Positions 294 through 64,000 of a DNA stretch of 64,000 nucleotides are shown piece after piece; the first letter of the stretch is position 1; each line of letters opens with the position of its first letter. The stretch lies in assembly GCA_002269645.1 (NCBI GenBank), contig NIVC01001242.1, positions 62,001 to 126,000 of the forward strand, read 5' to 3'. The position numbers and the translations under genes were made by a program. A model generated the notes under the pieces. That model searched no databases and had not been told where the DNA came from. It saw only the letters and a list, made by a program, of their open reading frames with translations. This stretch comes from Macrostomum lignano (taxonomy: Eukaryota).

Positions 294-918
294 CTGTGTA
301 GCCGTAAACGCAGCTGCAGTGATACCAGGGGCTCGCGTCTGTGTTGCTGCAGGTGCCTCCGTTTTGGCAGGGATTGCTTGATGAAGTGCTGCCATCGGAG
401 GTTGTAGCACAAAAGTTTATTCTAACAGTGCAATATGTACCAGTGTACGCCTCAGTGCACAGACACGGAGGAGTGCTTGACGTCACAGGACCCGGCCAGC
501 AAGTCCCGCCATTCTTGCAGTCGCCCTCGCTGCAGGCGGCTCGCCTCGTCCGCGCCAATTCGTTGGCGTCCTCGTCAGAACCTTCATATTGAAAATCAGT
601 GGTGGAAAAATTATATTCATAAAGCTAAAGTTATTAACAGGCATTTAAGCGTGAGAAGAATAATTACTATTGGCAACAGAATTTTCATGAATTCATAACA
701 CCTAAATATCATAACATCATTCCATAACATTTAAATTTCATAACGTCTAAACTTCAACTGTGTTGGGAATCGTTAATGAAAATCCTAATTTCCTGTAACG
801 GCAAGTTCATTGGCGGTAAAATGAAAAAAACCTTTTCTTCATGCGAACTTGGCTTACCTGAACCTCCTATCGCTTCATTTACACACAAAATTGACGATAA
901 ACCGATCATAATTAGCAT
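294..918 (-). CDS. Gene Z (5' part only): Crumbs-family EGF protein; signal-peptide exon plus furin-site/2xEGF exon, continues beyond the window start
   Basis: Exon 1 858-918 MLIMIGLSSILCVNEAIGGS-G|GTAAGC (alternative in-frame ATG at 972). Exon 2 294-581 (aag|GT TCT GAC...TAC ACA G|GTGGGT, phase 1-1) encodes ELARTRR-AACSEGDCKNGGTC...; its first EGF is near-identical to gene A exon 2. Confidence 0.8.
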
Positions 919-1994
919 CCTTATGATTTTTTGCCTCGGATTAACCCGCTGCTGAAGCACTCCAGATGTCATCCTACAAGCTTTAGAGGTGAAAAAGTAG
1001 CTGTCTTAGGTAGTCAAACAGCAATCTTCATCGAATGTACTCATAAGTGTACAAACGCAGTGAATAATTTCAAGCGATATATAAATATGAATTTAAATGT
1101 ATCTATAAATTGGAGTTGGGGTCGATTCTCAGGAAACTATTGAGTGCAGCCTTTAAACCTTCAGTGTAAATGGTTCAAAATGTAATCCATGTGCTCAGGG
1201 TAGGTTTAAATTTAAAACAATTCACAGCGCACTCACTAGTTTTGTTGCTCAGCTCAAATTATGCAAATATTGCTGATGAATCACCTGCCACTGATAAGTC
1301 ACGGATATTGTTGGGCTTTCAGATTAGATAATAGTGAAGTGATAGGTCGCATAGTCTTGAAGGGAGCTTCCACCTGAATCTTGTATTTATTGAGTTTATA
1401 TGGAATTTACACTAAGGTGAACTTCGCTTATTTCACACTAGACATAAATAACTACATGAAGAATTACTCATTACATTTGCATTCCTTATCTACTTATAAA
1501 ATTTATTTCTATATACACTGTAAAATCTATGCTTTCATTCCGTAGCTAAATTAAGCAACAAGTCTCGCATCAGGCTAAATGCGTGCCTAAATTGCCTGTT
1601 ATTTAGGTAATCTATTTTTAGAAAAAAAGCAAGATGTAAGTTCCCGGCGGGAAATTCTAGGGCTGTGTGAGCTCTCTGCTGTGTGAGCTTGTGTGATCTT
1701 GTGTGAGCGTGTGTGTCATTCACGCGATATGATTCATACCGTAACTTTCTGTGTGCGATTAGAAAGCTCACACGGCCCCCAAATTTCCCAGCGGGAATTT
1801 ACACTCCTATTCAGAAAAGAGGAACACAGTTTTAACAAATAATATTTTCATTGAGCTTAGCAGCAAAGCTGCAATCGATAACGTCCCAGGAATTTGAGCA
1901 ATCGCAATCGATTCCACGGACCTCATATAGATGCCAAAGCTGGTGAAGTATTCTGGGGTGCTCCACTATTTGAGCACATCTAATAGCAACCCAA

Positions 1995-2155
1995 ATGCAT
2001 CTAAGGCGCCAAAACGAGTGAGTGTCTGCGGCGCCAAAATGAGCGTCTGCGGCGCCAAAATGAGTGAGCGTCTGCGGCGCCAAAATGAGCGTCCGCGGCG
2101 CCAAAAGGAGTGTCTGCGGCGCCAAAATGAGTGTATGCGGCGCCTAAATGAGGAC
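1995..2155. repeat. 21-bp minisatellite, same family as 42420-42930
   Basis: gtctgcggcgccaaaatgagt units. Confidence 0.8.
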
Positions 2156-2159
2156 GCGC

Positions 2160-4302: not shown

Positions 4303-7300
4303 TCAAAAAAACACCTCCTGAGGCACCGGTTTGGCCGATTTCGATCGCAGGTGACCAACGCGAACCCCGGTGGTTGGATCCAACTTTGACTGAGACTGAA
4401 GATCCGATGAAGCGCTTGGACGGAACAGCGTGGTGAACTTTGCGACCAGGACAATAGCTGCGATGGGTTTTGGGGATATTGGAGATGAATTCATCATTCT
4501 GCAGACTAAGGGTAATAACTAAAAACTAGACAACACTAATGCTATTAAAAGCTACGCTTCACCTCTTAAAAACAAAATAAAAGAGGCAACCGGGCTTCGA
4601 CAATTTATAGGAGTTCAACTTTTGCAAGCTCTTGGACGTGGCATCCACAACCACCAGCTCTAGTAGACAGGGTAAGGGGGACGCCCTTTTAGGAGATTGA
4701 GGGACCCACATATGAGATCCTACACCCCTTTTAATGTATGGATACCAATCAATATACTAAAAATGGTTTGTCAGTAGGTATCTACGCTGGAATGTGATCG
4801 ATTTTGGCAGAAACGGCTCAACCGATTTACTAACCAACAATTATGCCAGCGACGACCACAACTCCAGCAACGATTCCAATTATCCCTCCCACCGAGGGCA
4901 CCGAAGCGACGGCAGAGCACGTGGGTCCGGAGAACCCATCCTTGCAATCGCAGACATACTTGTTCCACATGTCGCTGCAACGACCGGAGTTCTGACAGAC
5001 ACCCGTTTTACATACTACGTCTCCATGGCAACCAGGCGTTGGTGAGATGATGGAATCCGCGTCAGTTGCAGACCAGGAAAATCCCGGCGTGTCGGAGGGG
5101 AGCGACCGGTTCACTAGCGGGACCAAGTAGCCGTTGAGTCGCACGTTGCCAAGGCAACCCTTGAAGCCGCTGTCGCCAAGAACTACCACAGCAGCAGAGT
5201 CGAGAGTCAGCGGTGCAAAGTCATGAGATTCGCTGAAAGTCGTAGCAGCGTCGGTGCCATTGAACTTCGCACTGAGTTCTAAGCGCCGTTCGGTGAAAAA
5301 CCTGACGCCAAACGTAAATGGGAAGCCGGTTGCTATGGAGAAATCGGACATCGCGTGCTTGTTGTCAAGGGACACTCGCAGATGGCCGGACTTGGCCTCG
5401 ACAAACAGCTGGCGACCGTCGCTGTTGGTCATCGACAGCAGTTGGAAGTTCAGCTCGCGGGTGCGGGCCCAGCCAGTGAGGCTCGTCAATGCTTCATTGA
5501 AGCGGCTGGCCGATAATTTCAGCTTTGTGGAGGATTGGAATGTGGCGGTTGTGCGACCTGGCGAGTTTGGTGGTCGGAGAAGCAGAAAATGTAGAACGCT
5601 TTGTTGCTATGCATACTTATATTTAAAAAAGTATATACTCAACAACAGTACAAAGTTTCACCTACCAAGCAAATATATTTTTATTCACCATTTACTGTGC
5701 ATTTGAAATGAGAAGTTTTCTCTCAAACTACGCGTGATTTGCACAGGTGGAACTTTTGACTGTTGCTGAGTATGCGAGTTTTAAGTGCCAGTGAGCAATT
5801 TCTCTTGGACTGTACGAGAAAACTGAAATAGAAGATACGAGAAAACTGATCGGGGTAGCTTTAATCCGTCCAACCCTCGCACACCTCTTCCCCGACTTCA
5901 TTCTTCCACTCAAGTCTGCCGTGACGTAGCTAAGTTGGTTGCGTCACTCGTAAAGATTGAGAGACTTTACCTGCACTCTCAAAAGTGGCGACCACAGACG
6001 GAATCTTCTGTGATGGCGACTTTTCGATATGGCTGAGTATATTTTTATTGCGGCTTGTACTTTATAGCAAATAATAAATACTCACACTCGTATCCTCTTG
6101 GCTCCAAGTTGACGCACTGAGTGCCATTCGGACAGTCCTCCAATCCAGGAACGCAGTGGTCCCTGACTGAGCAATCAGCACTGCGCCAGCCAGTTTCGCA
6201 TTCGCAGCTAAAATTTGATTTGTGCAGGTTGCGAATTTTAAAGGCTTCAAAGAGTAATTTCAATCTTAATTCAAAAGTAACCTAAACATTGCTTACGAAA
6301 ACTTGTTGTAGAACACATTGATGCAGGTCGCATTATTCTGGCAGGGTTCCCAGTTTGTGCAAACGTCTTCGTTGACGACTCCATCAGTGATGGATTCGGT
6401 TTCACTGGCAGCGACAGCACCTGGCAGCAGGTCAGTCACGTTGAAGTCCACTGAACCCAGAATGAGTGGTTTGAGTCCATTGAGCTTCGGAGATGCAATG
6501 ATTCCTCGAAATCCGGTGAGATTCGTTGAAAGCGTTGACGAAATGCTAGTAGGTAAGGCAGGCAGTGATCTTCTTGACCTGCCTTTAGTGCCGCTGCTTT
6601 CGATTGGAGGCGGAGCCAGGGCTGCCAGAAGACCGCTGAAGCCGCCGATGATGAGCTGGCCTGACAGTTGCGGCAGCGGACTCGCGCTGCTCAGCGATGC
6701 CGATCTGACTGAAGATGACACTGACAGCGACAGCGAGCGACCCGATATCGACACGGAGATCTTCACGGAGACGTATTCACCGGTGGCCACCGAGTTCGAG
6801 GATGTCAGCGCTACTATTTCGGAGCCGTTGCCATACAGTATCTGGGCAGACAAACGGCCAGACGCATCGATCTGCAATAAAAAATCCCGAGAGGCAAGTT
6901 CAAGGATCAATAATCAAGGACTGTTTTTTTAATCATACTTTGTACTTTGTTGTCGACCAGTGCTTTTAGGATTGAAATTTTCACCTGTGTTCTCCGGTAT
7001 ATTGATCGTTTGCTAAAAGAATAGGGCCCAATTTCAAACCGCAATTGACATCTGAGACTGAATCATATTGCAGAAACGAAACGACAATTGTGACGATTGG
7101 CGCGTCGGGTTTCTCGAGCTCAAAATTTTGCCACTCTTTCTTTGCTCTACATTTGATTTTATCATAACCAAATATTGATATTGCAACTGCCTCGCACAGA
7201 TTTTTGGCATTTTAGCTAATCTATTATGCCACTCGTACTCAGTGTGTTTGAAGTGCCTTGTACTCAGTGTGACTGTGTTCTTGACCTTTATCCATTTTGC

Positions 7301-10300
7301 ATCAGTTCTGCATTTGCAAAGCATTCATTTCAGAGAAAACTTCCTAATTTTCGCAAGCTGTATATTTGCTGTCTTAAATTTTGCAACATTTACAAGGTGA
7401 AGCTACGATAAAATCAGTTTAAATTCCGCATAGAAAGGAAGGGCGTTCAGTCTTTTTAATTTTACCGTTTAAAATATTGTATAATACTGGTAAGAGCAAA
7501 AATGAAAATGAATGCGTTTAAATGCACTTTTCACGCGGAGCGTCGGTGGTGTGATTGATTTTACTTTAGGAGGAATCAATTTTAAAGAAATTATAAAAAC
7601 AGGGTTTCTTAATATAAATTATATAAATACCAAGAGCCGCCAAGAACACACCACTTGTGAATGCAGACTCCTTCGTAAGAATTATAATTAGCAATATATA
7701 CTAGGATTTATAATCTATCTATAAAAACTCACCGTAGCGAGCAGTCTCGGAGTGGTCGCCGAGTCGCTCGGGTCGCCCAGCAGCAGCAGAAACGCTCCTC
7801 GAGACAAAGTCACCAGCCTCAGCTCAATCGTCCACGAGTCTCCGCCATACACACTTGACACACCTGCTGCAGACGCGAACCTCGCTGATGACACGCTGCC
7901 GCCCACACCCAGTGAGAACGATGGAAGCTCAACGGAGCAGTTTCGACCTCCGAAGTCCGCAGCGCAGTGGCACACAAAGTCATTCCAAACATCTGAGCAC
8001 ATCGAGCTCGTCTTTGCTTCACAAGGCGACGGGCTGCCGCACTGCACCGACCGACTGCAGACTCCCCAGGTCGCGTTGCTCGACTCCGCCGTGGTCTCCG
8101 TAGCGACCAATGTCGAGTCGTTCGTCACGAGCCGCACGTCTCTCACGCAGCCGCGGAAGCCACCGCCGTCGATGCCGGATCCGCTCTCGCCGCCAACACG
8201 AACTGACATTCGACTGTTCGGCTTGAATGAGTTCGACAGTTCGTCGACCAGCTGTGCTCCAGGCATCTGACTCACTACTGACTCACTGCGACTCAATGTC
8301 GCACTGCCATTGGTCAGCGAGACCGACAGCGTCAGCCAATCAGTAGAGCCCAAGCTGTCGCTGATTGGCCAATCGGCTCGACCAATCACAGACGATGAGG
8401 CATTGAGGAACAACAGCACGAGACTGGAGTCGTGAGCGCCGACTCGGATGTCTCCCCAGTGAGACGAGAGCCGGACCAGATCGAAGTGGGCGAGACTCGT
8501 GCGGAACGACAGCTCGAAGGTGCAGTCAGCTGTTGTAAAAATGGCGCTGAAACTGGACGTCCCGTTGAATGACGCCAGAGTGGTCTCGTTGCACTGCGGT
8601 CCAGACCAGCCAGGCTTGCAGGTGCAGCGATAGCCGTGAGCAGGTGACGGCAGCTCTCGAAGAAGCAGCGGCTCGCAAGTAGCATTGTTCTGGCACGGGC
8701 TGGAGTCGCAGCCAGTCAGTCTGACGCTGCAGTTTTTGCCTCCGAACTCAGCGGGGCAGCCGGTGCAGGCATAATCCGCTACCAGGTCCTTGCAGACGGC
8801 TCCGTTCTGACACGGCTGTCCGAACCGCTCGCACTCGTCGATGTCGATTGAGCAGGTCGGGCCCTCGTAGCCGGGCAGGCAGTGGCAGGTGAATGAGGCC
8901 AGGCCGTCCGTACAGTTTGACGCGTGAGCGCACACGCTGCGGTTGGTGTCCGGATCCAGACAGTCGTTCGGGTTGATCTCGCACGTGTCTCCGTAGGTAC
9001 CTGATTTGAATGAAATATGGCTGTTTCTACAATAACATGTGGTAAAAGCATGGTTACTCAGCCGAGTCACCGTCTCATTTTAGGACATGAAAGTGTTTAT
9101 AAGAGATAAAGTCGAGCTTAAAAAGGCATTTTTCATAAGGTCAGTCTTACTTCCACTAAATAAAATACAGTAGAGGAGAAGCTGCAGAAGTATATTAACG
9201 GACTGCCAAAGGTAAACCCATAAGAAGGCAGAATTTGCAAGCCTACTGTCTTTTTGGTTAAAATAGAATCTCGTCAAGCACGAGGCTATCTCTGGTTGGG
9301 AAGCGAGTGCCCGGTACGAGAAAAAACAGCCAAACCCCACGTTTGACAAGCGAGGATCGGAGGGATAATATGGAGAGGTAGTCAAGCGGTGACCCTCAAA
9401 GTGTACAGACACTCCGAGACGGAATTGGATTGGAGCGGTAACGTACTAACAGACGTTAATAAACCCTACTAAGAGTAACGGCGCGGATGATAATGCTGGT
9501 GTTCGTACGTTCGTAGATCCGAGTGAAGACTTTGTTGGTAGTTCAGCGTCACTTTCTCGTTAGCTAATACTTCGCTTTGACACGCTGACGCTTTGTAGTT
9601 AGGGAGAGTACGCAAATGGCTAGAGGGAAGAGAGAAGAGAGTAGGGCGAGGGCTGAATACCATATAGAACACGGCTGGGTAATGACAGTGGGGGCTGGGA
9701 TGGGGCTAAGCAACACAGGGCTGGGGTGGGCTAAGCCACATAGGGCTGGGGGTGGGGCTAAGCTACACAGGGTTGGAGGTGGGGCTAAGCTACACAGGTT
9801 TGGAGGTGTGGCTAAGCTAGACAGGGTTAAAAGTGGGGCTAAGCTACACAGGGTTGGAGGTGGGGCTAAGCTACACAGGTTTGGAGGTGGGGCTAAGCTA
9901 CACAGGGTTGGAGGTGGGGCTAAGCTACACGGGGTTGGATGTGGGGCTAAGCTACACAGGGTTGGAAGTGGGGCTAAGCTACACAGGGTTGGAAGTGGGG
10001 CTAAGCTACACAGGGTTGGAGGTGGGGCTAAGCTACACAGGTTTGGAGGTGTGGCTAAGCTAGACAGGGTTAAAAGTGGGGCTAAGCTACACAGGGTTGG
10101 AGGTGGGGCTAAGCTACACGGGGTTGGATGTGGGGCTAAGCTACACAGGGTTGGCGGTGGGGCTAAGCTACACAGGGTTGGAGGTGGGGCTAAGCTACAC
10201 AGGGTTGGAGGTGGGGCTAAGCTACACAGGGTTGGAGGTGGGGCTAAGCTACACAGGTTTGGAGGTGGGGCTAAGCTACACAGGGTTAAAAGTGGGGCTA

Positions 10301-13300
10301 AGCTACACAGGGTTGGAGGTGGGGCTAAGCTACACGGGGTTGGATGTGGGGCTAAGCTACACAGGGTTGGAGGTGGGGCTAAGCTACACAGGGTTGGAGG
10401 TGGGGCTAAGCTACACAGGGTATGAGGTGGGGCTAAGCTACACAGTGTTGGAGGTGGGGCTAAGCTACACAGGGTATGAGGTGGGGCTAAGCTACACAGT
10501 GTTGGAGGTGGGGCTAAGCTACACAGGGTTGGAGGTGGGGCTAAGCTACACAGTGTTGGAGGTGGGGCTAAGCTACACAGGGTTGGAAGTGGGGCTAAGC
10601 TACACAGGGTTAAAAGTGGGGCTAAGCTACACAGGGTATGAGGTGGGGCTAAGCTACACAGTGTTGGAGGTGGGGCTAAGCTACACAGTGTTGGAGGTGG
10701 GGCTAAGCTACACAGGGTTGGAAGTGGGGCTAAGCTACACAGGGTATGAGGTGGGGCTAAGCTACACAGGTTTGGAGGTGTGGCTAAGCTACACAGGGTT
10801 AAAAGTGGGGCTAAGCTACACAGGGTTGGAGGTGGGGCTAAGCTACACGGGGTTGGATGTGGGGCTAAGCTACACAGGGTTGGAGGTGGGGCTAAGCTAC
10901 ACAGGGTTGGAGGTGGGGCTAAGCTACACAGGGTTGGAGGTGGGGCTAAGCTACACAGGGTTGGATGTGGGGCTAAGCTACACAGGTTTGGAGGTGGGGC
11001 TAAGCTACACAGGGTTAAAAGTGGGGCTAAGCACGCGAAGGCGTATTCAGCATGCCAGTGAAGTATGAGACAGACTAGGCCCATGGGCTAAGGTCTGCGA
11101 TGCTTCACGCCTGCCCCTATCTTCAGCAGGTCAAGGCTGGTGGGAGGTCTGCACCCTCTATTTGCCTCTGGCAGCCGCAGACCCCCCCCCCCCACGCTGT
11201 CTCGCAAGTCGACCCAGGGTACTCGTCCCCGCGTGTGTTCAAGGCAGTCCCTAGGGCTGCTGGACAGACTGGGCTCCGGCGCTGGCGACCCTATCCAGTG
11301 GCTTCGGCCGAATTTGGGTATGCGGGTCTGGCTCGCCAACCTGCAGGCCGTGGTACTGCTCAACGTACTCTCTAATGCCTAAGGTGTTGACCGTGCCGAT
11401 GGGCTGGAAGGCCGGGGAGTAGTCCGGTCGCAAGCGGTCCCCCTCCTGGTGTCGGGCCAGCCTTGAGGGTGCTATTGGCCTACTGCCCGGTCAGGTGGAG
11501 CGGCCGGGTGGGTACCGCGCCCCTTTGAGGGTAGCCCACCAACCTTTTATCATGGCCTTCGAGCCGACTATGGATAAACAAGCTATTTCTAGGGACGGGG
11601 ACCCTTCTAAACCCAACCTCAGTCCGAAGGACCGGCCGGCCCTGCTGGCAGATCCCAACCGACTGATTCAACTGTGGCAAAGGAAGGACCGGCTGGCTCT
11701 GCTGGCAGATCCGACCAGAGCTACCAAACTCAAAATACCCTAAGACCTGCCAGCTCCGCTGGTGGATCTAAGGGAACCGCGAGCTCTGAGCCTAAAGGAC
11801 CGGCCAAATCTGGCAGATCCGATGAAGCTCAGCGGGCTCGGCTTGAGCGCAAACGCGCTAAACAACGCGCCAAAAGGCAGGCCAAGAAGGGAGCTGCGGG
11901 GGCCAAAGCGGCGGCGTCCACCATGGATGCTGAAGCGACTGGAGTCCCAAGGCAACCAGGCGGGCCGGCCGGTGGAAGCTCCAGTAGTTCAGCGGCGGCG
12001 CTCCCTGGAGCTGCTGCCGCGGCTGCTGAGGCCGAAACCACGGCGCAACAAATGGCCACTGCCAACAAGGAGGTTCCTTCGGGAGCTACCTTTGCGGCGA
12101 AGGCCAAGGCCAAAATCCCGGGAGTGATCATCCAAGGTCGCGACCAGGACTGGACCACTGATCAGCTTCAAAAAGTGTGGAGTGCTGTTGACTCCTATCT
12201 GATTGAGCTGACTGTCGAGGAGGGAATCTCCATCGGCGTTGAGCGGATGGTGCTGCGAAGCACATTCGTTCTTATTGCTCCTAGCAGCGAGGAGGACGCT
12301 CGGCGGCTGCTCCAGCGGCTACCGACGGTCTCCTTGGATGCTGACCTTGGCGGAGCTCTTTTTCTTCGCGAGGGCCAGCGTCCAAAGACGATACCCTATG
12401 TGGTTTTCGTCCCTGCTAAGAGCACCGCAGCTGGACCAGACGTTATTCGCCGGGTCCTACTGCGTCTGAACCCCGACCTCCCTGCTAGTGGACTGGTGTA
12501 TCACCGTAAAGTCCGCAGGGGGGAGACGGGCAACTCAATTGTCCTCGGCCTTTCCAGCACTTGGGCGAGTCGGTACCCTAATGGATCCTCTTTCCAGCTG
12601 GGTGCCCTCAAGCTCAAGTTGCGCCGAGGAAAGTCTGCCAAAGGGAAGGCTACTGCCAACCCCGGCATCTCCGGCAAGAGCGGGGCGCAGTCTAAGGCCC
12701 AAGGAAAGGCGCAAGCCGATCCCAAAGCCAAAGCTGCATCTCGCCCCTCTGCTAGCAGCAGTTCGGCGACCGCGGTAACGGCTCCGGCCAAGCCCCGGGA
12801 ACCAAACCTGCCAGTCGGAGAAGGAGTTGAGGACGAGGCCGGGTCTTCGGAATCCGAGCTCTCCTCGGCCACCTTGGTGGGGTCTGAAGGTAAAGATGCA
12901 GGTGAGGAAGCTTCCTCCATCCTGTCATCGGAGCCTGAGGACTCTGCTGGGGGGCCGGTGGGGGTGAGGAGGCCATGGACGTCGACCAACTCCCATCTCC
13001 CAGTCAAGCCCCAGCGGCCTGGGACGAGGACGATCTGTTGTCCAAGTCTCCTTGATGGCCCTGGGCTCTAGCCAGATATTGCATTTAATACAGTATGACT
13101 AAGCTCCACGCTGCCAAAGGAGCGACATTCTGTCTGCAAATAAATTTACAGCATTGCGTATCTGCGTCAGTAAATCTGATGAAGATTGCTGAGCTGTACA
13201 GGCCAGGCCTCATCCTGATCCAGGAACCCTGGATGCGCAACGGTAAGTTGCCCAACATTCCCTCTGGCTACTCTGATTTTTATGTGTGTGGCCCGGGGAA

Positions 13301-25300: not shown

Positions 25301-26040
25301 CTCTTAAGATCTTTAAATTCTACTACTGTAAGTAGATAATAAGAGACTAATCTTCAGTTGAAATTAAAAAGTTTTTAGAAAAATGGAAGCCAAATATTGC
25401 GTATATATTTATTGTGTTCTGCTGCCGCATCTCTGTATTTCTGTACGTTGTTTTATAGTCTTTGTAATTCGATTGGTTCGAATATGCTATAAATATTAAA
25501 ATTTTCGCCAAATTATAGATTACGGCGAATTGCGTAAAATAAAAAATGCTGACGTAAAATGCTCCAGATGCCTAAATACCTACTTTCGTACTTTGAATAC
25601 TTTGGCTAAGTTTTAGGCAAGAACCATGCAGAGGTCTCTTCCATTACTAAAGAGGTTCTTGGGCTTGAGGGGCACGGCGTATATTTAATTTAATTTTATG
25701 CTCTCATACACGGGAGGTCAACTCCGGGGACCCCGAAAAATTTCGTGTTTTTTGACCACAGGGTTTTGGGCTGGGGCCGATCGGAGACCCCATAAAGATA
25801 ACTTGTTTTGAGAAGTTTTTGAATAAGTTTAGTTAGTCTGTTCCTGAAACATATGAATACACGACAAAACTTTGAGGATAGGACTGTTTTTACTTATTTT
25901 TTGGGTGCTTTTAATAAAACTATTACGTTGCCATAAACCCGATCATAATGCTGCTAGCAAACTGTGACCCGAATAGCAGCAATCTGGCTGGCAAACTTTG
26001 TGGAGCAGGCAGACAGAGAGACAGACAGACACAGACAGAC

Positions 26041-26099
<59 letters not shown>

Positions 26100-28200: not shown

Positions 28201-28308
28201 TAAAATTCATTAGTCAGTGCTGAGACTTGTAAATAAAAATGACTAACTTCCTTTAACGACAAAAGCATTCGCGTTAAATTAACACAAGTCTTTTAAACAT
28301 TGAAAAAT

Positions 28309-42190: not shown

Positions 42191-42346
42191 AGTAACTCCG
42201 ATGCTCAAAATTCACAGGGTTTAGCGGAGCAGCAGAAATTTTTTCACAATCTGCACCTAAGATCACCTAGGCAGACAGTTCAGGTTAAGTAGAAAGTGTT
42301 TAGTATAAGCATTATTTTTTACTTAATGTTGATGTACACTTGGTAC

Positions 42347-53599: not shown

Positions 53600-56500
53600 T
53601 CACGCGAGCTGGATTGAACTGAACTTGGCTGAATTGTTACTCAAATTATCGTAGGTGTGGTCATCGGTCGACGTTTCATATACACCAGCATAAGGCGATT
53701 CTGTTGCTTCGGTCGGCTGACCTCCAACACTGAGCTGCTGCAATGCAATTAGAATTCATATCCAAGTGATATTTTTAGCAATGCAGCAGAACCGCCTTAT
53801 CGTTCAAAGGGAAATATCTTACATGCATCCGAATGCGGTCATAATCAGCAAAGGTGTAAGGAGTTTCGTCCTCTGTGTCAGGTTCCGGCGTGCATTTACC
53901 CTAGGAATTAACGAATCATAGAATACAAATTTAATAATAAACAGAACAGTACTAAACGATCATAACATTTATCATAACAAAGCACTACTAAGAAAAAGAA
54001 GCTTACCTGAACAAAATCTTCTTGTGGCGGAGATGGAGCACTGCTTGTGAAGGAACCTTTACCCTGCAACTGACTCCTCTAAAATTTTAACAAAAAAACT
54101 CAGGATTGTTACTCAAACTATGTAGCTCGTAGACCTACACCCGTAATTCATACCAATCAATAAACATACATGCCACTACAACTTACCGATCGATATCGAA
54201 CAATGAAAATAACAATGCCACACGTAAAAGCCGAAGACAGTGTTACACTGACCACAACCAAGATTGAATAGAAACCAATTGAGCCGACAAAACCAGTTGA
54301 ACATTCTGATGAAGCTAAAATACGATGTGCGGGCTTAAGATAAAATGAATCGTCTTAAAAACTGTACGCAGGATAAACTTAGTGCGAAACCTACCATGCG
54401 ATTTCAAACACAGATACCCATCAGCTGTTTTGTACTTGAATGACCCGTTAAATGGCCACGGAAGAGTTTCATGGTTATAATTTGCTGAGTGGCTTCTCTC
54501 TAAACACACTTCGTCGCTACCGCACGGATTCGGGCTGCATTCTGAGTTGTCAACTGAGCAGTCCGTTCCAGAATAGCCGGGGTGGCACACGCAACTGAAA
54601 AAAAGTCTGATTGCATTCAAACCTAAGTATTATTTAATAATGCCATAATTAGCAAAAAATACTCACGAAGCCTTTGACGACGTGCACGTTCCTCCGTTTC
54701 TGCATGGCAAATATACCTCACAAATATCAAGCGACGAGCTCAAGACGACACCTGAAGACTCACTGGCTGCCACTGCTCCTGACAGAGCAAGGTAAAATGG
54801 GGAAGAACTCAAAATCAGTGGCCTAGCCTCATTCAATCTCGGATGGGAAATTATTCCCCGAAATCCAGTCACGCCTGAAGGCATCGCAGCCCAGATGCTG
54901 GCTGGAAAAACAGGCAGAGATCGCTTTGATCTGCCGCCGGTGCTTGGCGGTGATGCGCCACTGAAGCCGCCGATGATGAGCTGGCCTGACAGCTGCGGCA
55001 GCGGACTCGCACTGCTCAGCGATGCCGACCTGACTGAAGATGACACTGACAGCGACAGCGAGCGACCCGATATAGACACGGAGATCTTCACGGAGACGAA
55101 GCTGCCGGTGGCCACCGAGTCTGAGGACGTCAGCGCTGCGATGTGGGAGCCGTTGCCGTGCAGTAACTGGGCGGACAGACGGCCAGAGTGATCGATCTGA
55201 AAAGATTGAAACAAATACTGACTTTGCAGTGAGCTGCAAGTGTACTTGTATGCGCCAGTCGCTAGAGCGGGGTGGGGGTTGCTATTGTACAGCATGTACG
55301 TGCTCTTCACCCACCCCTGTCTCTATCTTTTATACCCAGTTATGTAACAATCGTTGTATCGTATTTAACCTGCGTATCGATCTAATAAACGCCAAGAGGC
55401 TTCGTCAACTCTCAGTTGTATCTCTCTGCCTTAGTCTACAACTGGTAGCAGAGCAAATTATTCTAGAATGGCTGAGAAAGGTTTGACCGCCAGTGCAGTG
55501 CTGCCCAGAGTTTTCAGTACCGGCAACTTTAAGGAATGGCTGCAGCGTTTCAATGTATGCGCAAAAGTCAACAAGTGGGACACGTGCAAAGCGGAGCGAC
55601 TGGCCACATTTTTGGATGGCGAGGCTCTCGTCGTTTATTTGGAACTGTCGGCAGGAGATCAGGCAGACTACGACAAAGTAGTCCAGGCATTGGATGATGC
55701 ATTCCACCCGAACGGCGAGCACTTCGCCGTCATGGAGGCGTTCAAATCAAGGAAGATTTTGTCAAATGAGACTCCACGCATGTATCTTTACGAGTTAAAG
55801 AAGATGCTCAAAAGCTCCTCCGTGGACAACAAAGATGCTCAAGAGGCTCTGCTGTTCCATCAGTTCGTCTGTGGCCTTCCCGAATCCGTGAGCTGGCAGA
55901 TTCGCGCGGACTCCAGCGTTAAGACCTCAGAGCAAGCTCTTCAAAAGGCCCAGCTAATGATGCAGCACAGCTCGCCAAGTATCCCAGCAGCAGCGGTGCA
56001 ACCTCAGTCGAGCCAATCCAGCGAAGTTCAGGAGCTGCGGGACACTGTGCAGAGTCTGCAGGCATCGGTGAGCACCCTGAGTTCCCAGCTGCAGCAGCTG
56101 GCAGCCTGTGGAGTGAGGACGAGCAGCACAACGAGACCTCAGCACCGTTCGAAGTCTGACATCATCTGCTACAACTGCCACAAGGCCGGCCACATTGCCA
56201 GAGATTGCTACAGCAGGCGACAGCCGGGAAACGCCAGAGGCTGGGGTGTGCGGGCCCGCAACCCCGGCCAGCAGTAACTGCGGGCCCAGCAGCAGCGGCT
56301 TCAAGGCCGGCGCTCACAGTCGGCGGGATCTTCGACGGATGCAGCGTCGCGCCCGACCGACTATCGCAGTGTGAGTGCAAGCTTGATGGCAGAAGTGTGA
56401 AGGCGCTGTTAGACACCGGAAGCCAGTGCTCACTAGTTGAGTCCAGCATCCTGACAAAATCCCAGCTCAGACAGGCAACTGCAGCCAGAGTGCAACTTCA

Positions 56501-59500: not shown

Positions 59501-62466
59501 CGCCAAGAGGCTTCGTCAACTCTCAGTTGTATCTCTCTGCCTTAGTCTACCACTTTACCAGATTTCACTCAATCTAGAACAAAACACTGAGGACACTGAC
59601 CGTAGCGAGCAGTCTCGGAGTGGTCGCCGAGTCGCTCGGGTCGCCCAGCAGCAGCAGAAACGATCCTCGAGACAAAGTCACCAGCCTCAGCTCAATCGTC
59701 CACGAGTCTCCGCCATACACACTTGACACACCTGCTGCAGACGCGAAGATCGCTGATGACACGCTGCCGCCCACACCCAGTGAGAACGATGGAAGCTCTA
59801 CGGAGCAGCGCCGGCCTCCAAAGTCCTCAGTGCAGTGGCACACAAAGTCGTTCCACACATCTGAGCACATCGAGCTCGTCTTTGCTTCACAAGGCGACGG
59901 GCTGCCGCACTGTACCGACCGACTGCAGACTCCCCAGGTCGCGTTGCTCGACTCCGCCGTGGTCTCCGTGGCGACCAATGTCGAGTCGTTCGTCACGAGC
60001 CGCAGGTCTCTCACGCAGCCGCGGAAGCCGCCGCCGTCGATGCCGGATCCGCTCTCGCCGCCGACACGAACCGACATTCGACTGTTCGGCTTGAATGAGT
60101 CCGACAGTCCGTCGACCAGCTGTGCTCCAGGCAGCTGACTCACTCCTGACTCACTGCGACTCAATGTCGCACTGCCATTGGTCAGCGAGACCGACAGCGT
60201 CAGCCAATCAGTAGAGGCCAAGCTGTCACTGATTGGCCAAGCGGCTCGACCAATCACAGACGATGAGGCATTGAAGAACAACAGCACGAGACTGGAGTCG
60301 TGAGCGCCGACTCGGATGTCTCCCCAGTGAGACGAGAGCCGGACCAGATCGAAGTGGGCGAGACTCGTGCGGAACGACAGCTCGAAAGTGCAGTCAGCTG
60401 TTTTGCTGGAATTGGTGTTGTCCAGCAAGACGCTGAAGGCCGTGCTTCCGCTGAATGACGCCAGAGTGGTCTCGTTGCACTGCGGTCCAGACCAGCCAGG
60501 CTTCACACGGCTCAACACACAGACACGGAGGAGTGCTTGACGTCACAGCACCCGGCCAGCAAGTCCCGCCATTCTTGCAGTCGCCCTCGCTGCAGGCGGC
60601 TCGCCTCGTCCGCACCAATTCGTTGGCGTCCTCGTGAATCTCTGCAAAACATTTTTGGATAATAAATCAGATTTTTTGGATAGTTTTAGGGTATTCGAAC
60701 ATAAACTGTTAACTCTTCCTATTTTTTCACTACTTTAGCAAACTAATTAAATATTGACAAAACTCAAAGAGCTCTGTAAAGTTACTGTCATTTTGCTGAA
60801 CCCTACTTCAACTAGAGCTCCAATACAAGAGTATGTGTTTGTAGAAATATTCGATTTTATATAAATTTAAATAGAGCATATCCACTGATCACTAAAAATA
60901 CACAGTTTATTATTTTTTCACAGTGCACTTCAAGGCCGCAAAAGTTACACTGCTCAGCCTAAGACTCGATGGCATACAGTAGGTTTGATTTTAACAAACT
61001 TGGCTACAATACAAACACTTGAGCTTTCATGTACTCAGCGTTTTAGTTAACCTTGTTCTGCTTAAAAGATTGACGCAAAACGACTCGCTATGGATTACAT
61101 GGTCGGGGAACAAAGCCAAGAATTCTACATCGCTAAAACCCTATCACAGTATTCTGGGAATCGGTGTTAATAGCACTCACTAGCAATCTAGTGCCCCCCC
61201 CTTCGGGGCGCGCAGAAAGCAAGGGGCAAAAAATATTCATGCAAAACAATTAAAAAGTACATTTTCTTGAGAACCAACTCCTTCTTCAGCTTTATAAATC
61301 AAAATTTGAGTAAAATTGTCACGGACAAAGATGTGTTTGCTATGAATCTTTCTTTTTTTCGAAAATTATTACTAGGAAGACAACAAAATATAGTTTTCAC
61401 AAAAATAGACATCCCCCCTAAAGGCCTAAATAAAAAACATCCCCAAGACAGCAAGCATCTCCCTGATAGCAAGCATCCCCCAGATAGCAAGCATCCCCCA
61501 GATAGCAAGCATCCCCCAGATAGCAAGCATCCCCCAGATAGCAAGCATCCCCCCGATAGCAAGCATCCCCCAGATAGCAAGCATCCCCCCAGATAGCAAG
61601 CATCCCCTAGATAGCAAGCAGCCCCAAATAGCAAGCATCCCCCAGATAGCAAGCATCCCCCCGATAGCAAGCATCCCCCAGATAGCAAGCATCCCCCCAG
61701 ATAGCAAGCATCCCCTAGATAGCAAGCAGCCCCCAAATAGCAAGCATCCCCCCAGATAGCAAGCATTCCCTAGATAGCAAGCAGCCCCCAAATAGCAAGC
61801 ATCCCCCAGATAGCAAGCATCCCCCCAGATAGCAAGCATCCCCCAGATAGCAAGCAGCCCCCAAATAGCAAGCATCCCCCCAGATAGCAAGCATCCCCCA
61901 GATAGCAAGCATCCCCCAGATAGCAAGCATCCCTGGATAGAAAAAATCCCATACATTTAGATACATGTAGACAGTACCCCCCCTCCCAAATAGCAAGTAC
62001 CCCTCCCCCTCGAGAGAAAGCATCAATATTTGCAAGTAGCTAGTAGCACTTATTTCGGCGCCAAAAGCGCTACATTTTAGCGCTTCAGACACTCATTTTA
62101 GCAACGCAGACACTCATTTTACCAACGCAGACACTCATTTTACCAACGCAGACACTCATTTTAGCAACGCGGACACTCATTTCGGCACCATTCGCTAAAA
62201 AAACTAAAAAAATTTCTAGGCGTTTGAATTGCCACAAAGTATGTTTATATGAGCGCATAAAAATGTATATTTGCATTACTGCAGTAAATTGCGAGCATGG
62301 CCTGAAACGCAACATCTTTCATTTCTCTCAAGTTCGGATGCATTTAGAAAACTGGCATAGCAGACTCACCATCTGTTCGTCTGTCACGCAAAACCGAAGC
62401 AGCCACAGCTGCTTGGTGCACAAAAATGAGCAAAATCAGATGCTGCAGCGAACACCACGACAGCAT
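53600..62466 (-). CDS. Gene E: SP, furin site, EGF, LamG, EGF, LamG, EGF, CLERS-EGF, TM, Tyr tail; frameshifted in exon 2 (possible pseudogene)
   Basis: Exons 62370-62466 (MLSWCSLQHLILLIFVHQAAVAAS), 59601-60641, 54667-55196, 54395-54594, 54187-54305 (TM), 54007-54078, 53823-53900, 53600-53737. Exon 2 is 1 nt too long, with a frame break near 60505. Confidence 0.62.
55225..55440 (+). repeat. 5' LTR
   Basis: TG...CA termini, AATAAA, followed by the PBS. Confidence 0.93.
55468..56277 (+). CDS. gag: Gag with CCHC zinc knuckle
   Basis: 269-aa ORF; CYNCHKAGHIARDC. Confidence 0.9.
   Translation: MAEKGLTASAVLPRVFSTGNFKEWLQRFNVCAKVNKWDTCKAERLATFLDGEALVVYLELSAGDQADYDKVVQALDDAFHPNGEHFAVMEAFKSRKILSNETPRMYLYELKKMLKSSSVDNKDAQEALLFHQFVCGLPESVSWQIRADSSVKTSEQALQKAQLMMQHSSPSIPAAAVQPQSSQSSEVQELRDTVQSLQASVSTLSSQLQQLAACGVRTSSTTRPQHRSKSDIICYNCHKAGHIARDCYSRRQPGNARGWGVRARNPGQQ
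56226..56287 (+). promoter_or_regulatory. Predicted -1 ribosomal frameshift signal (G GGA AAC plus H-type pseudoknot)
   Basis: Heptamer 56226-56232 in the gag frame, 7-nt spacer, stem 1 56240-56247/56261-56268, stem 2 56252-56260/56279-56287; protease ORF is in the -1 frame. Confidence 0.8.
56226..59179 (+). pseudogene. pol: Pol (protease, truncated RT, RNase H, integrase) with frameshift and premature stop
   Basis: LLDTGS; GYFQI...KTAF...MPQGL; FFDD; FTDAS...ATEKECLA...TDH; H-x4-H...C-x2-C; AIDI...HSDKG...GNGLAE. Frameshift near 56910, TGA at 57242. Confidence 0.88.
59336..59551 (+). repeat. 3' LTR
   Basis: Preceded by the PPT; terminal base is C instead of A. Confidence 0.93.
61430..61940. 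repeat. 18/19-bp minisatellite (GATAGCAAGCATCCCCCA)
   Basis: Tandem units in gene E intron 1. Confidence 0.92.
62055..62195. repeat. 21-bp minisatellite family copy, inverted
   Basis: acgcagacactcattttagca units are the reverse complement of the 42.4 kb family. Confidence 0.7.
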
Positions 62467-63877
62467 AATTGTATTCGATGATAAACCGTTTTGAGCTGAT
62501 TGCAAAGCTGGGCCAAGGCTCGATTGGAAGTTTTACAGTTTGATATACAGCTGAAAAGGGTTTATGAGGCTAAATATTCACTTTCGTTAACAGCTTCTCC
62601 TAACAAAAAATGCTGCAAGAAGACACGAAGGTATGGTTTTCTAATCAAACTGCTCTTAGCTAACGATCAGATAGCAGAGCTCACTGCGTTTGAAACAAAT
62701 CAACGATTTCCAGCTTTTCTGTAAAAATACTCCAAAAATGGTGGTCAATATTGCGGCTTCTAAACGTTCTTATGGTATTTCAAATTCTATAAACTCAAAC
62801 AAAGGCAAACTTAAATTTAAATATTTTAAGCTTTAAATATTGCTATCCAAGGTTTCTTTAAATGGGTAAAATGTCCTTTTACAATGAAGCTCACAATGTC
62901 TCACAAGCACAACAATCAGTGCTTATTTATACAGCTAAAATAAAAAATACAAAATAATCTGAATAACAACTTAAAATACGAATTGAATGTTTTGATTCGT
63001 GCACACGAGCTTGTATTTCTTGTTGCCTTTGTTGCTGTTGATCTCTGAAAAAATAATAAAATAATTTTGTGTGGGTGAAAAAAAATTATCAGTATATTTA
63101 TACTTAAAGTATCTTGAATAAAACTATTCTAAAGGACAATCAGCCATGATGATAAAACTTATTGAGATTTGTTTATCAGATGAGAATACTGGTACAACGG
63201 TTCGATCACAAAATATTTCAGTATTAGAAATATTAATCGAAACTGCAATTCGTGTATCAAGATATTAGCAGCAGTGCTACTTGTCTAGAAAGAATGATGG
63301 TATACTTTACTCAAAAACTTCAAAAACTAAAAAAATAACAAGGCAACATGATTTTTTAATAAATGGCATTGTTTATTGCGATATGTACAGTTATGAATTT
63401 TCCTGCATCTGCTTCGAACGAGAACGCAGTATTAAAATGACTGCCGTCCTTCGATCCGAGGACCGAAATAATGCTTCATAAAGTCATTAAATTTAACTAC
63501 CAACAAGATGTGGCCAAAGCGACTTGGGTATTGTAGTATAAACACAGATATCATCCAACCGACCACCACAACTACTATCTACAATATGCTCATCACAGTA
63601 CATGGTGATTTTAAAATAGAACAAAAAAGTGCAGGTACGCTCCTAGAAGGTTTTTGTTACTTTTATTTATCCTGTGATGATAAATTGTACAAAAAGCTAC
63701 GTTACTTGACACAGTTCTTTGACCATTTCAACATCCTAATTGGCTCATACAGACTCTACAATCCCAAGTAAAACACAGACATTCACATTCCACAGCTGTC
63801 AAAATATTGAATTAAATTTTTCATTTGGCAAGTCGAAAGAAAGTACGAGATTAATACGAGACTACGAAGAGCCGGAG

Positions 63878-64000
63878 CCTTGCAGACGGCTCCGTTCTGA
63901 CACGGCTGTCCGAACCGCTCGCACTCGTTGATGTCGACTGAGCAGGTCGGGCCCTCGTAGCCGGGAAGGCAGTCGCAGGAAAAGCTCCTGACACCGTCGG
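63878..64000 (-). CDS. Gene F fragment: EGF-coding exon entering from the window edge
   Basis: Minus strand DGVRSFSCDCLPGYEGPTCSVDINECERFGQPCQNGAVCK, near-identical to 8790-8880; homology stops abruptly at about 63878. Confidence 0.7.

What the first reader, a model, noticed from the sequence alone, without database searches (positions are those of the whole stretch)
294..64000. Tandem cluster of at least 7 Crumbs-derived receptors built combinatorially from shared exon modules
Seen: seven co-oriented gene models, six with a signal-peptide exon (61-127 nt, phase 1) in the window. Ectodomains range from 1 EGF (D), 2 EGF (B), ~6 EGF (C) and EGF plus 2 LamG (E) to the full 19 EGF/3 LamG layout (A). 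TM exons and tails differ. Known: animals normally carry 1-3 crumbs genes, with a conserved ~37-aa tail, acting in epithelial polarity. Inference: this is a lineage-specific, rapidly diversifying cell-surface receptor family derived from crumbs. Its clustered, shuffled, mixed-tail layout resembles allorecognition or innate-immune receptor clusters more than a polarity gene.
Basis: partly seen in the sequence, partly recalled or inferred. Interest (0 to 1): 0.82.

Follow-up and report, generated by a model that had tools for sequence, protein, structure and literature searches.

The report
Tandem Crumbs-paralog genes in a flatworm
This stretch of the flatworm Macrostomum lignano genome carries a head-to-tail row of membrane-protein genes copied from the cell-polarity gene crumbs and reshuffled by recombination; all have lost the tail motifs crumbs signals through, some copies are damaged, and nothing here shows an immune or self-recognition role.

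Summary
The observation largely holds. All genes lie on the minus strand.

Gene models with canonical GT-AG introns:
- A: 1473 aa, about 19 EGF and 3 LamG domains.
- B: 186 aa, 2 EGF.
- C: 652 aa, 6 EGF.
- D: 1 EGF and a long tail.
- E: 2 LamG.
- G: its 5' end only.
- F: an EGF fragment at the window edge.

Six signal-peptide exons of 61-127 nt, all phase 1, are present.

The window is Macrostomum lignano. UniProt A0A1I8FZM3, a 6620-aa read-through model, carries D-C-B-A-G plus three further units in the same order, at 97-100% identity for A, B and G. With E and F the array holds at least ten genes.

Crumbs ancestry is well supported by four things:
- a Crumbs-specific long-insert EGF;
- a collinear LamG3-EGF-TM region;
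- a relic tail, KPVPQEVFF against KPPPEERLI;
- a separate canonical M. lignano Crumbs with GTY...ERLI.

No window gene keeps the FERM- or PDZ-binding motifs.

Caveats: E is an out-of-frame fusion that lacks about 8.5 kb present in a paralogous locus. F is truncated. D carries two 1-nt frameshifts, which may be assembly errors.

dN/dS is about 0.5, so there is no sign of diversifying selection. The allorecognition or immune reading is untested speculation.

The parts
63878..64000 (-). Gene F fragment. A hybrid EGF piece (...DGVRSFSCDCLPGYEGPTCSVDINECERFGQPCQNGAVCK). The 5' part of the gene lies outside the window.
   Evidence: 96-98% nt identity to the big exon of A, L001 and L002, ending abruptly at 63878 with no GT donor. 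95% aa identity to P0005 175-214. The first 20-30 nt resemble the X2/X4-type exon.
62370..62466 (-). Putative signal-peptide exon of E (MLSWCSLQHLILLIFVHQAAVAASVLRDRRTD, 97 nt, phase 1, donor GTGAGT).
   Evidence: Not homologous to the signal-peptide exons of A, G or P0150. Such ORFs occur about once per 2.5 kb by chance, so it is unverified.
60504..60644 (-). E: fragment of exon 2 (EDANELVRTRRAACSEGDCKNGGTCWPGAVTSSTPPCLC) and its out-of-frame junction with the LamG1 exon.
   Evidence: 94-96% nt identity to exon 2 of A, G, L001 and L002 over 60638-60507 only. Frame 1 runs to a stop near 60397, while the LamG1 frame is open only from 60542.
59601..60503 (-). E: exon with LamG1, one EGF and the start of LamG2.
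   Evidence: 95.5% nt identity to L001 10193-11147. 91% aa identity to P0001. Donor GTCAGT at 59601.
53600..55196 (-). E: remaining exons. LamG2 55196-54667, EGF pair including the long-insert EGF 54594-54395, TM 54314-54187, tail 54078-54007, 53900-53823 and 53737-53600 (stop). The tail carries YDRI, YAGV-x9-YDNL.
   Evidence: Canonical splice sites. The 682-aa open frame is 94% identical to P0001, the transcript-based BOX15_Mlig017317g1.
44816..49379 (-). Gene D: signal peptide, 1 EGF, TM and a roughly 390-aa tail with [DE][DE]xYxxPD repeats. Exons 49379-49292, 49183-49013, 48865-48759, 48665-48456, 47615-47274, 46926-46727, 46149-45908, 44983-44816.
   Evidence: The L001 copy gives an intact 509-aa ORF, and that assembly annotates a 521-aa gene there. 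The window lacks one base at 46903 and one at 45955, which breaks the frame.
32266..38937 (-). Gene C: signal peptide, 6 EGF, TM and a roughly 300-aa tail. 12 exons, 652 aa, intact. Exons 38937-38811, 38673-38401, 38304-38112, 37618-37290, 35452-35340, 35240-35187, 34628-34425, 33707-33660, 33571-33488, 33408-33142, 32662-32561, 32430-32266.
   Evidence: 98-100% identity per exon to the UniProt M. lignano models P0025-P0027. The tail is collinear with D's tail.
27564..31183 (-). Gene B: signal peptide, 2 EGF-like modules, TM and a 22-aa tail (...GQLPCCCKSRRPNSELEYF*). 186 aa. Exons 31183-31114, 30579-30505, 30419-30216, 28514-28363, 27623-27564.
   Evidence: 100% identical to P0149 930-1047.
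4303..27034 (-). Gene A: 1473 aa, intact. Signal peptide, about 19 EGF, 3 LamG, TM and a roughly 45-aa tail ending KPVPQEVFF*. Exons 27034-26938, 26870-26601, 23948-23756, 21392-21048, 20801-20574, 18312-17867, 9000-7733, 6871-6297, 6207-6086, 5557-4835, 4457-4303.
   Evidence: Pfam. LamG3 and LamG1 folds. 97-99.8% identical to P0149. The acceptor of the last exon (4457 or 4505) is the least certain junction.
294..918 (-). Gene G 5' end: signal-peptide exon 918-858 (61 nt) and exon 2 581-294. The rest lies beyond the window start.
   Evidence: Exon 2 is 100% identical to P0149 2905-2999, which continues into further EGFs, LamG2, TM and a Tyr-rich tail.

Best explanation
The window is part of a tandem, co-oriented array of Crumbs paralogs in Macrostomum lignano. 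The array holds at least ten genes, and about six and a half of them lie in the window.

How the array arose (inferred from the anatomy):
- An ancestral crumbs-type gene was duplicated in tandem.
- Because the EGF-coding exons are repetitive and phase-symmetric (1-1, 2-2), unequal or non-allelic recombination inside them deleted, duplicated or fused modules. The hybrid EGFs at the junctions are the trace of this.
- One large exon (4 EGF, LamG1, 1 EGF and the start of LamG2) is kept 88-95% identical across all members, including the canonical Crumbs. This implies gene conversion.
- Different TM and tail exons were joined on.

What the genes encode (shown): separate type-I membrane proteins whose ectodomains range from 1 EGF to about 19 EGF plus 3 LamG. 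There are three tail classes:
1. A degenerate Crumbs tail, ...RVGHLRSKSAKPVPQEVFF, in A.
2. Long tails rich in tyrosine motifs, in C, D and E.
3. A short Cys-rich tail, in B.

The polarity-signalling motifs (FERM-binding GTY and PDZ-binding ERLI) survive only in a separate canonical Crumbs gene.

Likely function (inferred): the array members are neofunctionalised adhesion or signalling receptors. Their EGF/LamG ectodomains would bind extracellular ligands, and the C, D and E tails would recruit SH2-type partners after tyrosine phosphorylation. They are not polarity determinants.

The array evolves by birth and death. In this copy E and F are rearranged and probably dead, and D is either frameshifted or mis-assembled.
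For: Organism and locus:
- Window exons are 90-100% identical to M. lignano models.
- P0149 (UniProt A0A1I8FZM3) carries D-TE-C-B-A-TE-G plus three more units in window order. A is 97-99.8% identical, B and G 100%.

Separate genes:
- Every unit with its 5' end in the window has its own ATG and a hydrophobic first exon. A-E each have a TM segment and an in-frame stop, and their junctions use canonical GT-AG splice sites.
- The NCBI Mlig_3_7 gene set (BOX15_Mlig locus tags) calls separate genes at paralogous loci: a 521-aa D ortholog and a 747-aa E ortholog in L001, and a full-length 1313-aa P0150 in L002. That this gene set was built from transcripts is from my own knowledge.

Crumbs origin:
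- Crumbs proteins dominate the hits.
- The long-insert EGF is 46% identical to Tribolium Crumbs (E 4e-37).
- LamG3 aligns to the third LamG of CRB2 and has the LG fold.
- The tail aligns collinearly with Crumbs tails.
- The canonical M. lignano Crumbs (P0147 plus P0154, tail ...SGTYGPS...PPPEERLI) is the nearest relative of A's LamG3 outside A's own copies.

Recombination:
- Hybrid EGFs in E, F and P0005.
- Mosaic identity to the canonical Crumbs: big exon about 91-93%, N-terminal EGFs about 58%, LamG3 48%.
- L001 carries an apparently complete E ortholog, so the window copy lacks about 8.5 kb.

Constraint:
- Coding against non-coding divergence is 3.0% against 6.3% for E and 1.05% against 2.46% for D. 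dN/dS is 0.57 and 0.49.
Against: - No RNA evidence for this very locus was available. Transcript support comes from paralogous loci.
- Signal peptides were judged by hydrophobicity only.
- The function of the tails is inferred from short motifs that also occur by chance.
- dN/dS near 0.5, the broken E and F, two frameshifts in D and two retrotransposon insertions are also what a partly decaying array would show.
- Whether the canonical Crumbs gene lies elsewhere in the same array is unknown. Only 10 kb upstream of it could be inspected, and no gene is called there.
- The search meant to find orthologs of A's C-terminal part in other flatworms returned nothing, so the age of the expansion is not established.
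Confidence: 0.72

Rival explanations
1. One reading: the cluster is a rapidly diversifying recognition system (allorecognition or innate immunity). Shuffled ectodomains would give binding diversity, and the tails would signal through ITAM- or ITIM-like tyrosine motifs.
For: - The layout is tandem and co-oriented with variable ectodomains and mixed tails.
- The tyrosine motifs are suggestive: YAGV-x9-YDNL in E, SAYDVI in P0150, and four [DE][DE]xYxxPD in D.
- Structure differs between near-identical copies: E is intact in L001 and rearranged here.
Against: - dN/dS is 0.49 and 0.57, not above 1. The nine amino-acid differences in D lie in the signal peptide, the N-terminal linker and the tail, not in the EGF.
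- No polymorphism, copy-number or expression data exist here.
- The short motifs are not specific.
- From my own knowledge, M. lignano is a solitary worm with no known allorecognition.
- The literature searches returned no paper describing this family or naming these transcripts.
Confidence: 0.1
2. The array is mostly non-functional debris: decaying duplicates of crumbs in a repeat-rich, recently polyploid genome, with no function of its own.
For: - E is an out-of-frame fusion that lacks most of its EGFs, and F is truncated.
- D has two frameshifts.
- A young LTR element and a LINE sit in introns.
- dN/dS of about 0.5 indicates relaxed constraint.
Against: - A (11 exons, 1473 aa), C (12 exons, 652 aa) and B (5 exons) are fully open with canonical splice sites.
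- E's seven downstream exons are still open.
- Coding DNA is about half as diverged as flanking non-coding DNA.
- The Mlig_3_7 assembly calls gene models for close paralogs.
Confidence: 0.13
3. The modules form one or two giant genes, as the UniProt read-through models suggest (A0A1I8FZM3, 6620 aa; also P0025-P0027).
For: - All units are on one strand.
- Automatic predictions in UniProt join D, C, B, A, G and more into single proteins.
Against: - The fused models run through retroelement-derived ORFs (window 40949-41389 and 2523-2951). They skip the TM, signal-peptide and terminal exons and ignore the in-frame stop codons that end A, B, C and E.
- The NCBI gene set for the Mlig_3_7 assembly separates the units.
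Confidence: 0.03
4. The damaged features (the D frameshifts, the E junction and the F break) are assembly artefacts in a repetitive region, not biology.
For: - In the D region, 16 of 19 single-base indels against L001 are 'window one base shorter', mostly in homopolymers, and both coding frameshifts are among them.
- The young LTR element (LTRs 99% identical) also has a broken pol.
Against: - The bias is absent in the E region: 1 'shorter' against 2 'longer'.
- E's junction needs one base removed or two added, which is the opposite of the usual missing-base error.
- The LTR insertion has a clean 4-bp target duplication, ACTT.
Confidence: 0.35

Closest known systems
Crumbs (Drosophila Crb; vertebrate CRB1/CRB2)
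   Same: - Type-I membrane protein with a long EGF array interrupted by three LamG domains.
- Contains the Crumbs-typical EGF with a long insert just before the LamG region (46% identity to Tribolium Crumbs).
- The LamG3-EGF-TM-short-tail order is collinear.
- The end of A's tail, RVGHLRSKSAKPVPQEVFF, resembles RVEMDNVLKPPPEERLI.
   Different: - No window gene has the FERM-binding GTY(S/R)PS motif or the C-terminal ERLI.
- Tail lengths are about 22 to 390 aa instead of 37.
- B, C and D lack LamG domains altogether.
- At least ten tandem copies, instead of the 1-3 genes usual in animals (that number is from my own knowledge).
- The Crumbs tail features are as described in PMC3564977.
Canonical M. 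lignano Crumbs (BOX15_Mlig027982g3 N-terminal part plus BOX15_Mlig013136g1 / A0A1I8G0Z2 C-terminal part)
   Same: - Same species and the same exon modules.
- The big exon (LamG1) is 91-93% identical to gene A.
- LamG3-EGF-TM is 48% identical to A.
   Different: - It keeps ...RRKESGTYGPS...PPPEERLI.
- It lies at the end of another contig, with no gene called in the 10 kb upstream.
- Its N-terminal EGFs are only about 58-63% identical to A or C.
Eyes shut (EYS), Notch and fibropellin-type EGF/LamG proteins
   Same: EGF arrays, with LamG domains in EYS. They appear among the weaker hits.
   Different: - They score lower than Crumbs.
- EYS is secreted.
- Notch has LNR and ankyrin modules that are absent here (Pfam).
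- They do not share the long-insert EGF alignment or the tail collinearity.
Draper / CED-1 / MEGF10-type receptors (EGF-rich ectodomain with a tyrosine-motif tail)
   Same: Single-pass proteins with an EGF ectodomain and a tail bearing YxxL/I-type motifs. This is a functional analogy for C, D and E.
   Different: No EMI domain and no NPxY (sequence). There is no sequence relationship beyond generic EGF. The resemblance is a lead from memory, not a tested membership.
Invertebrate allorecognition clusters (Hydractinia Alr, Botryllus fuhc region)
   Same: Tandem clusters of single-pass surface proteins with variable ectodomains.
   Different: Those are Ig-like or otherwise unrelated folds, and they are defined by extreme allelic polymorphism and by genetics. 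Neither is shown here. The comparison is from my own knowledge only.

Membership tests
Crumbs | Ectodomain of many EGF repeats with three interspersed LamG domains | tested here: met
   Met for gene A only. It has 17 canonical EGF, 1 long-insert EGF and 1 partial module. LamG2 is found by Pfam, LamG3 by fold and profile, and LamG1 weakly. E has two LamG domains; B, C and D have none.
Crumbs | Crumbs-type EGF with a long insert (C.E.SN..LY...LP..F...F.Y..A.G..C) | tested here: met
   Present in A, B, C and E. C's copy aligns to Tribolium Crumbs 791-917 at 46% identity, E 4e-37.
Crumbs | Juxtamembrane FERM-binding motif (R..GTY.PS) | tested here: not met
   Absent from the tails of A, B, C, D and E. 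Present in the separate M. lignano gene P0154.
Crumbs | C-terminal PDZ-binding motif ERLI | tested here: not met
   The C-termini are A ...QEVFF, B ...LEYF, C ...LEKF, D (L001 frame) ...IARF and E ...IQLA. A's KPVPQEVFF aligns to KPPPEERLI but is not ERLI.
Crumbs | Being the orthologue (a single conserved polarity gene) rather than a paralogue | tested here: not met
   A canonical Crumbs with the GTY...ERLI tail exists elsewhere in M. lignano. The window genes are therefore paralogues.
Polymorphic recognition-receptor cluster (allorecognition or innate immunity) | Diversifying selection or hyper-polymorphism in the ectodomain | tested here: inconclusive
   Only one comparison was possible, window against L001. 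dN/dS is 0.49 for D and 0.57 for E, and there are no replacements in D's EGF. There are no population data.
Polymorphic recognition-receptor cluster (allorecognition or innate immunity) | Signalling tails with functional ITAM or ITIM motifs | not testable with these tools
   Motif-like strings exist: E has YAGV-x9-YDNL, and P0150 has SAYDVI. Phosphorylation and SH2 binding cannot be tested in silico.
Draper / MEGF10 | EMI domain plus NPxY and YxxL in the tail | tested here: not met
   Pfam finds no EMI domain, and none of the tails contains NPxY.

The most novel reading that the evidence does not exclude
A flatworm has turned the ectodomain of the polarity protein Crumbs into a recombining, birth-and-death family of surface receptors with new phosphotyrosine-signalling tails. 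The family would be used for recognising non-self, pathogens, mates or sperm. Unequal crossing-over within EGF exons would be the diversity generator.
Probability: 0.1. Interest if true: 0.8.

Novelty: new variant of a known kind. Interest (0 to 1): 0.5.

Why it matters
Crumbs is usually a low-copy gene with a strongly conserved tail. Here the ectodomain modules have been copied at least ten times, reshuffled, and joined to unrelated cytoplasmic tails, while a canonical copy is kept elsewhere.

This is a clear natural example of exon shuffling by recombination within phase-symmetric EGF exons, combined with concerted evolution of a single exon.

It also shows that the current UniProt entries for this locus are chimeric read-through models that fuse up to eight genes and transposon ORFs. 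Those entries are labelled 'EGF-like domain-containing protein', 'Delta-like protein' and 'Cubilin', and include one of 6620 aa. This matters to anyone using the M. lignano proteome.

The biological role of the family is unknown. If the members are expressed in specific cell types, they would be candidates for new adhesion or signalling receptors in a regeneration and reproduction model animal.

Tried and rejected
- A word-indexed homolog search with A's LamG3-EGF-TM-tail (292 aa) returned nothing at E <= 0.001. The exhaustive HMMER search was needed instead.
- Single-sequence searches of LamG3 and LamG1 against PDB sequences gave only E 1.5 (neurexin) and E 0.4 (irrelevant).
- Pfam does not detect LamG3 and barely detects LamG1.
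- LamG1 on its own shows only weak BLAST similarity to Crumbs LamG1.
- I tried to rescue E's frame with a mini-intron. The only GT...AG pair spans 18 nt, which is too short, so I rejected it.
- I considered F plus E as one gene interrupted by an insertion. F's 5' end is X-type, like P0005, unlike the L001 big exon. The 3.4 kb between them has no TE signature apart from minisatellites. This is left unresolved.
- I considered that the window might be another species. Rejected: A, B and G are 97-100% identical to M. lignano UniProt models.
- Literature searches found no paper describing this family: Macrostomum plus crumbs; the Mlig transcript ids; Macrostomum plus EGF-like or gene family expansion.
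- No prokaryote-oriented tool (tRNA, promoter or plasmid/phage searches) was relevant, and none was used.
Full report
**What the window is.** The sequence is eukaryotic. It is rich in minisatellites and carries retrotransposons. Every EGF-like reading frame lies on the minus strand. The largest exon (7718-9079) finds Macrostomum lignano proteins at 87-93% identity, followed by fibropellin-like, Crumbs, Notch and Eyes-shut proteins. UniProt M. lignano models P0025-P0027 match window exons at 90-100%. The 6620-aa model P0149 (A0A1I8FZM3) contains D, a transposon ORF, C, B, A, another transposon ORF, G and three further units, in the window's order. Gene A is 97-99.8% identical to it, and B and G are 100% identical. 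The window is therefore M. lignano. With E and F, the array holds at least ten genes and extends beyond the window start.

**Gene models.** I located exons using the M. lignano proteins as guides and a splice-site search that requires frame continuity. All coordinates are on the minus strand.
- A: 11 exons, 27034-4303, 1473 aa, fully open.
- B: 5 exons, 31183-27564, 186 aa.
- C: 12 exons, 38937-32266, 652 aa.
- D: 8 exons, 49379-44816.
- E, downstream part: 7 exons, 60503-53600, 682 aa open.
- G: signal-peptide exon 918-858 and exon 2 581-294, after which the gene leaves the window.

The chosen donors are mostly GTGAGT, GTAAGT or close variants, and every junction is GT-AG. EGF exons have phases 1-1, 1-2, 2-2 or 2-1. 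The separate TM exons of B, C, D and E have phase 1-0, and the tail exons of C and E (and D's first two) are phase 0-0.

**Domains.**
- Pfam finds 13 EGF stretches and one significant Laminin_G_2 domain (LamG2) in A.
- A six-cysteine pattern finds 17 EGFs in A. A also has one EGF with a 31-residue insert and one four-Cys half module, giving about 19. The same pattern finds 5 plus 1 in C and 1 in D. B has a short EGF and a long-insert EGF.
- LamG3 in A (5555-5013) aligns at 22-28% identity with the third LamG of CRB1/CRB2-type proteins. The resulting profile hits neurexin LNS domains at 2.8e-50. An AlphaFold model (pLDDT 81, pTM 0.81) matches agrin, neurexin and laminin LG domains.
- LamG1 is more divergent. 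Pfam gives E 0.049 and the model has pLDDT 59, but its best fold matches are again laminin, perlecan and neurexin LG domains.

**Are they separate genes?**
- Every unit whose 5' end lies in the window has its own ATG and hydrophobic leader. A-E each have a TM helix and an in-frame stop.
- The UniProt models that fuse the units read through retroelement-derived ORFs (window 40949-41389 and 2523-2951) and skip the signal-peptide, TM and terminal exons.
- The gene set of the Mlig_3_7 assembly uses BOX15_Mlig... names; from my own knowledge it was built from transcripts. It calls separate genes at paralogous loci.
  - In L001 (NIVC01000114.1), a 747-aa E orthologue (P0001) is followed by a 521-aa D orthologue.
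  - In L002, there is a complete 1313-aa family member, P0150, with a signal peptide and a stop.
- There is no RNA evidence for the window locus itself.

**Damaged members.**
- L001 matches window 43.5-51.0 kb at 96.9% nucleotide identity, and matches the E region at 92-95.5%. L001 appears to carry a complete E orthologue: signal-peptide exon, exon 2, three EGF exons and the big exon.
- In the window, only a 121-129-nt piece of exon 2 (60638-60507) remains. It abuts the big exon at the codons for KPGWSGPQC. About 8.5 kb is therefore missing relative to L001.
- The two halves of that junction are in different frames. Reading from the EGF start stops near 60397. One base fewer would make a perfect hybrid EGF. 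This shows that the breakpoint lies at equivalent positions of two EGF repeats.
- F (64000-63878) is itself a hybrid EGF of the kind seen in P0005. Its homology ends abruptly without a donor.
- D lacks one base at 46903 and one at 45955 compared with L001 and the UniProt models, and both deletions break the frame. The L001 version gives an intact 509-aa protein.
- In the D region, 16 of 19 single-base indels are 'window shorter', mostly in homopolymers, which points to assembly error. The bias is absent in the E region, so the matter stays open.
- A Gypsy-like LTR element sits in E's intron and is absent from L001. It spans 55224-59554, has 220-bp LTRs 99% identical, and has the target duplication ACTT.

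**Crumbs ancestry.**
- A query made of B, C and D returns Crumbs proteins from many phyla directly after the Macrostomum hits.
- The long-insert EGF (C.ERSN..LY...LP.PFN..F.Y..A.G..C) is present in A, B, C and E. It aligns, together with the two preceding EGFs, to Tribolium Crumbs 791-917 at 46% identity (E 4e-37).
- A's EGF-TM-tail aligns collinearly with Crumbs C-termini. RVGHLRSKSAKPVPQEVFF lies opposite RVEMDNVLKPPPEERLI, but the GTYSPS FERM-binding motif is missing. The Crumbs motifs are as described in PMC3564977.
- The exhaustive search with A's LamG3-EGF-TM exon finds two kinds of close hit. One is A's own UniProt model (P0153). The other is P0154 (A0A1I8G0Z2, with cluster member BOX15_Mlig013136g1). 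It is 48% identical, and its tail is ...RRKESGTYGPSKAESRSNAHAQAQPPVRPPPEERLI.
- P0154 overlaps the C-terminal end of P0147 (BOX15_Mlig027982g3), so the two form the canonical M. lignano Crumbs. That gene lies at the end of another contig, with no gene called in the 10 kb upstream.
- The window genes are therefore Crumbs paralogues, not the orthologue.

**Mosaic identity.** The big exon of A is 91-93% identical in protein to the canonical Crumbs and 88-95% identical to other members. The N-terminal EGF exons are about 58-63% identical and LamG3 only 48%. This pattern implies exon-level gene conversion or very recent exchange. Together with the hybrid EGFs, it supports recombination within EGF repeats as the process that generated the different architectures.

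**Tails and likely mode of action.** There are three tail classes.
1. A has a degenerate Crumbs tail of about 45 aa.
2. C and D have homologous long tails with repeated motifs: [38 protein letters not shown], and VYDTIEN or VYDELDN. E has a different long tail with YDRI and YAGV-x9-YDNL, and P0150 has two YDVI motifs.
3. B has a 22-aa tail with a CCC cluster.

The inference is that C, D and E are receptors or adhesion molecules that signal through phosphotyrosine docking. A may still bind a PDZ partner through ...EVFF. None of this is shown.

**Selection.** Window against L001:
- E: coding divergence 3.03%, non-coding 6.29%, dN/dS 0.57.
- D: coding divergence 1.05%, non-coding 2.46%, dN/dS 0.49.

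This indicates purifying but relaxed selection, with no evidence of diversifying selection. D's nine replacements lie outside the EGF.

**Verdict.** The crumbs origin and the module shuffling are well supported. The allorecognition or immune analogy has no support yet. The family is present in databases only as uncharacterised or mis-fused models, and the literature searches found no paper describing it. It is a new variant of a known kind, of moderate interest.

Noticed in passing
window 9701-17411: A non-LTR retrotransposon on the + strand sits inside intron 6 of gene A. A 486-aa ORF at 11611-13068 has no Pfam hit. ORF2 at 13089-16583 is 1165 aa, intact, and has an AP-endonuclease, reverse transcriptase and RNase H. 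The element is flanked on both sides by arrays of the same 27-bp minisatellite (9701-11032 and 16935-17411), so it apparently inserted into the array.
   Followed up: partly
window 55224-59554: A Gypsy-like LTR retrotransposon on the + strand sits in the intron between E's LamG1 and LamG2 exons. Its 220-bp LTRs are 99% identical, its target duplication is ACTT, and a PBS-like TGGTAGCAGAGC follows the 5' LTR. It encodes gag (zinc knuckle), protease, RT, RNase H and integrase. It is absent from the M. lignano locus L001. Although young, its pol is split by a frame change near 56900 and a stop at 57242-57244.
   Followed up: partly
window 43532-51039 against L001 15262-22765: 16 of 19 single-base indels are 'window one base shorter', mostly in homopolymers, and they include the two that break gene D. 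In the E region the count is 1 against 2. The two regions also differ in divergence from L001 (dS 0.017 against 0.046). This suggests mosaic relationships or local gene conversion between the copies, or uneven assembly quality.
   Followed up: partly
UniProt A0A1I8FZM3 (P0149), A0A1I8J8V8, A0A1I8J7K6, A0A1I8JB73, A0A1I8FUY6, A0A1I8JA97: These public M. lignano protein models are chimeric read-through predictions. They fuse up to eight neighbouring genes and transposon-derived ORFs, and carry misleading names such as Cubilin and Delta-like protein.
   Followed up: yes
L003 (NIVC01000045.1) and proteins P0147 and P0154: The canonical M. lignano Crumbs (tail GTYGPS...PPPEERLI) is split into two partial gene models, Mlig027982 and Mlig013136, each found on more than one contig. 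Its big exon is 91-93% identical to the array members, while the rest of the protein is far more diverged.
   Followed up: partly
L004 (NIVC01002221.1), protein P0163: This is a third kind of Crumbs-like gene in M. lignano (Mlig002106.g5/g7, Mlig011649.g2). It has an unrelated N-terminal region, a LamG3-like domain and a tail RNRRSETGQYRPSKEE...QVARL. Its locus sits between a tyrosine-phosphatase gene and a myosin gene, not in an array.
   Followed up: no
window 29939-30105 and 34756-35097; also 2005-2152, 42423-42931 and 62086-62182: The same minisatellite units recur in introns or spacers of different array members. The 15-bp unit occurs in inverted orientation in B's and C's introns. The 21-bp unit TGAGTGTCTGCGG(C/T)GCCAA occurs near G, between D and C, and upstream of E. 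These repeats could serve as additional substrates for rearrangement.
   Followed up: no
window 48865-48759 (D TM exon): The UniProt models of D skip the TM exon, joining ...TEVLP directly to GKLICRQP. Both junctions are phase-compatible (donor at 49032, acceptor at 48665). A TM-less soluble isoform is therefore conceivable, or it may simply be a prediction error.
   Followed up: no
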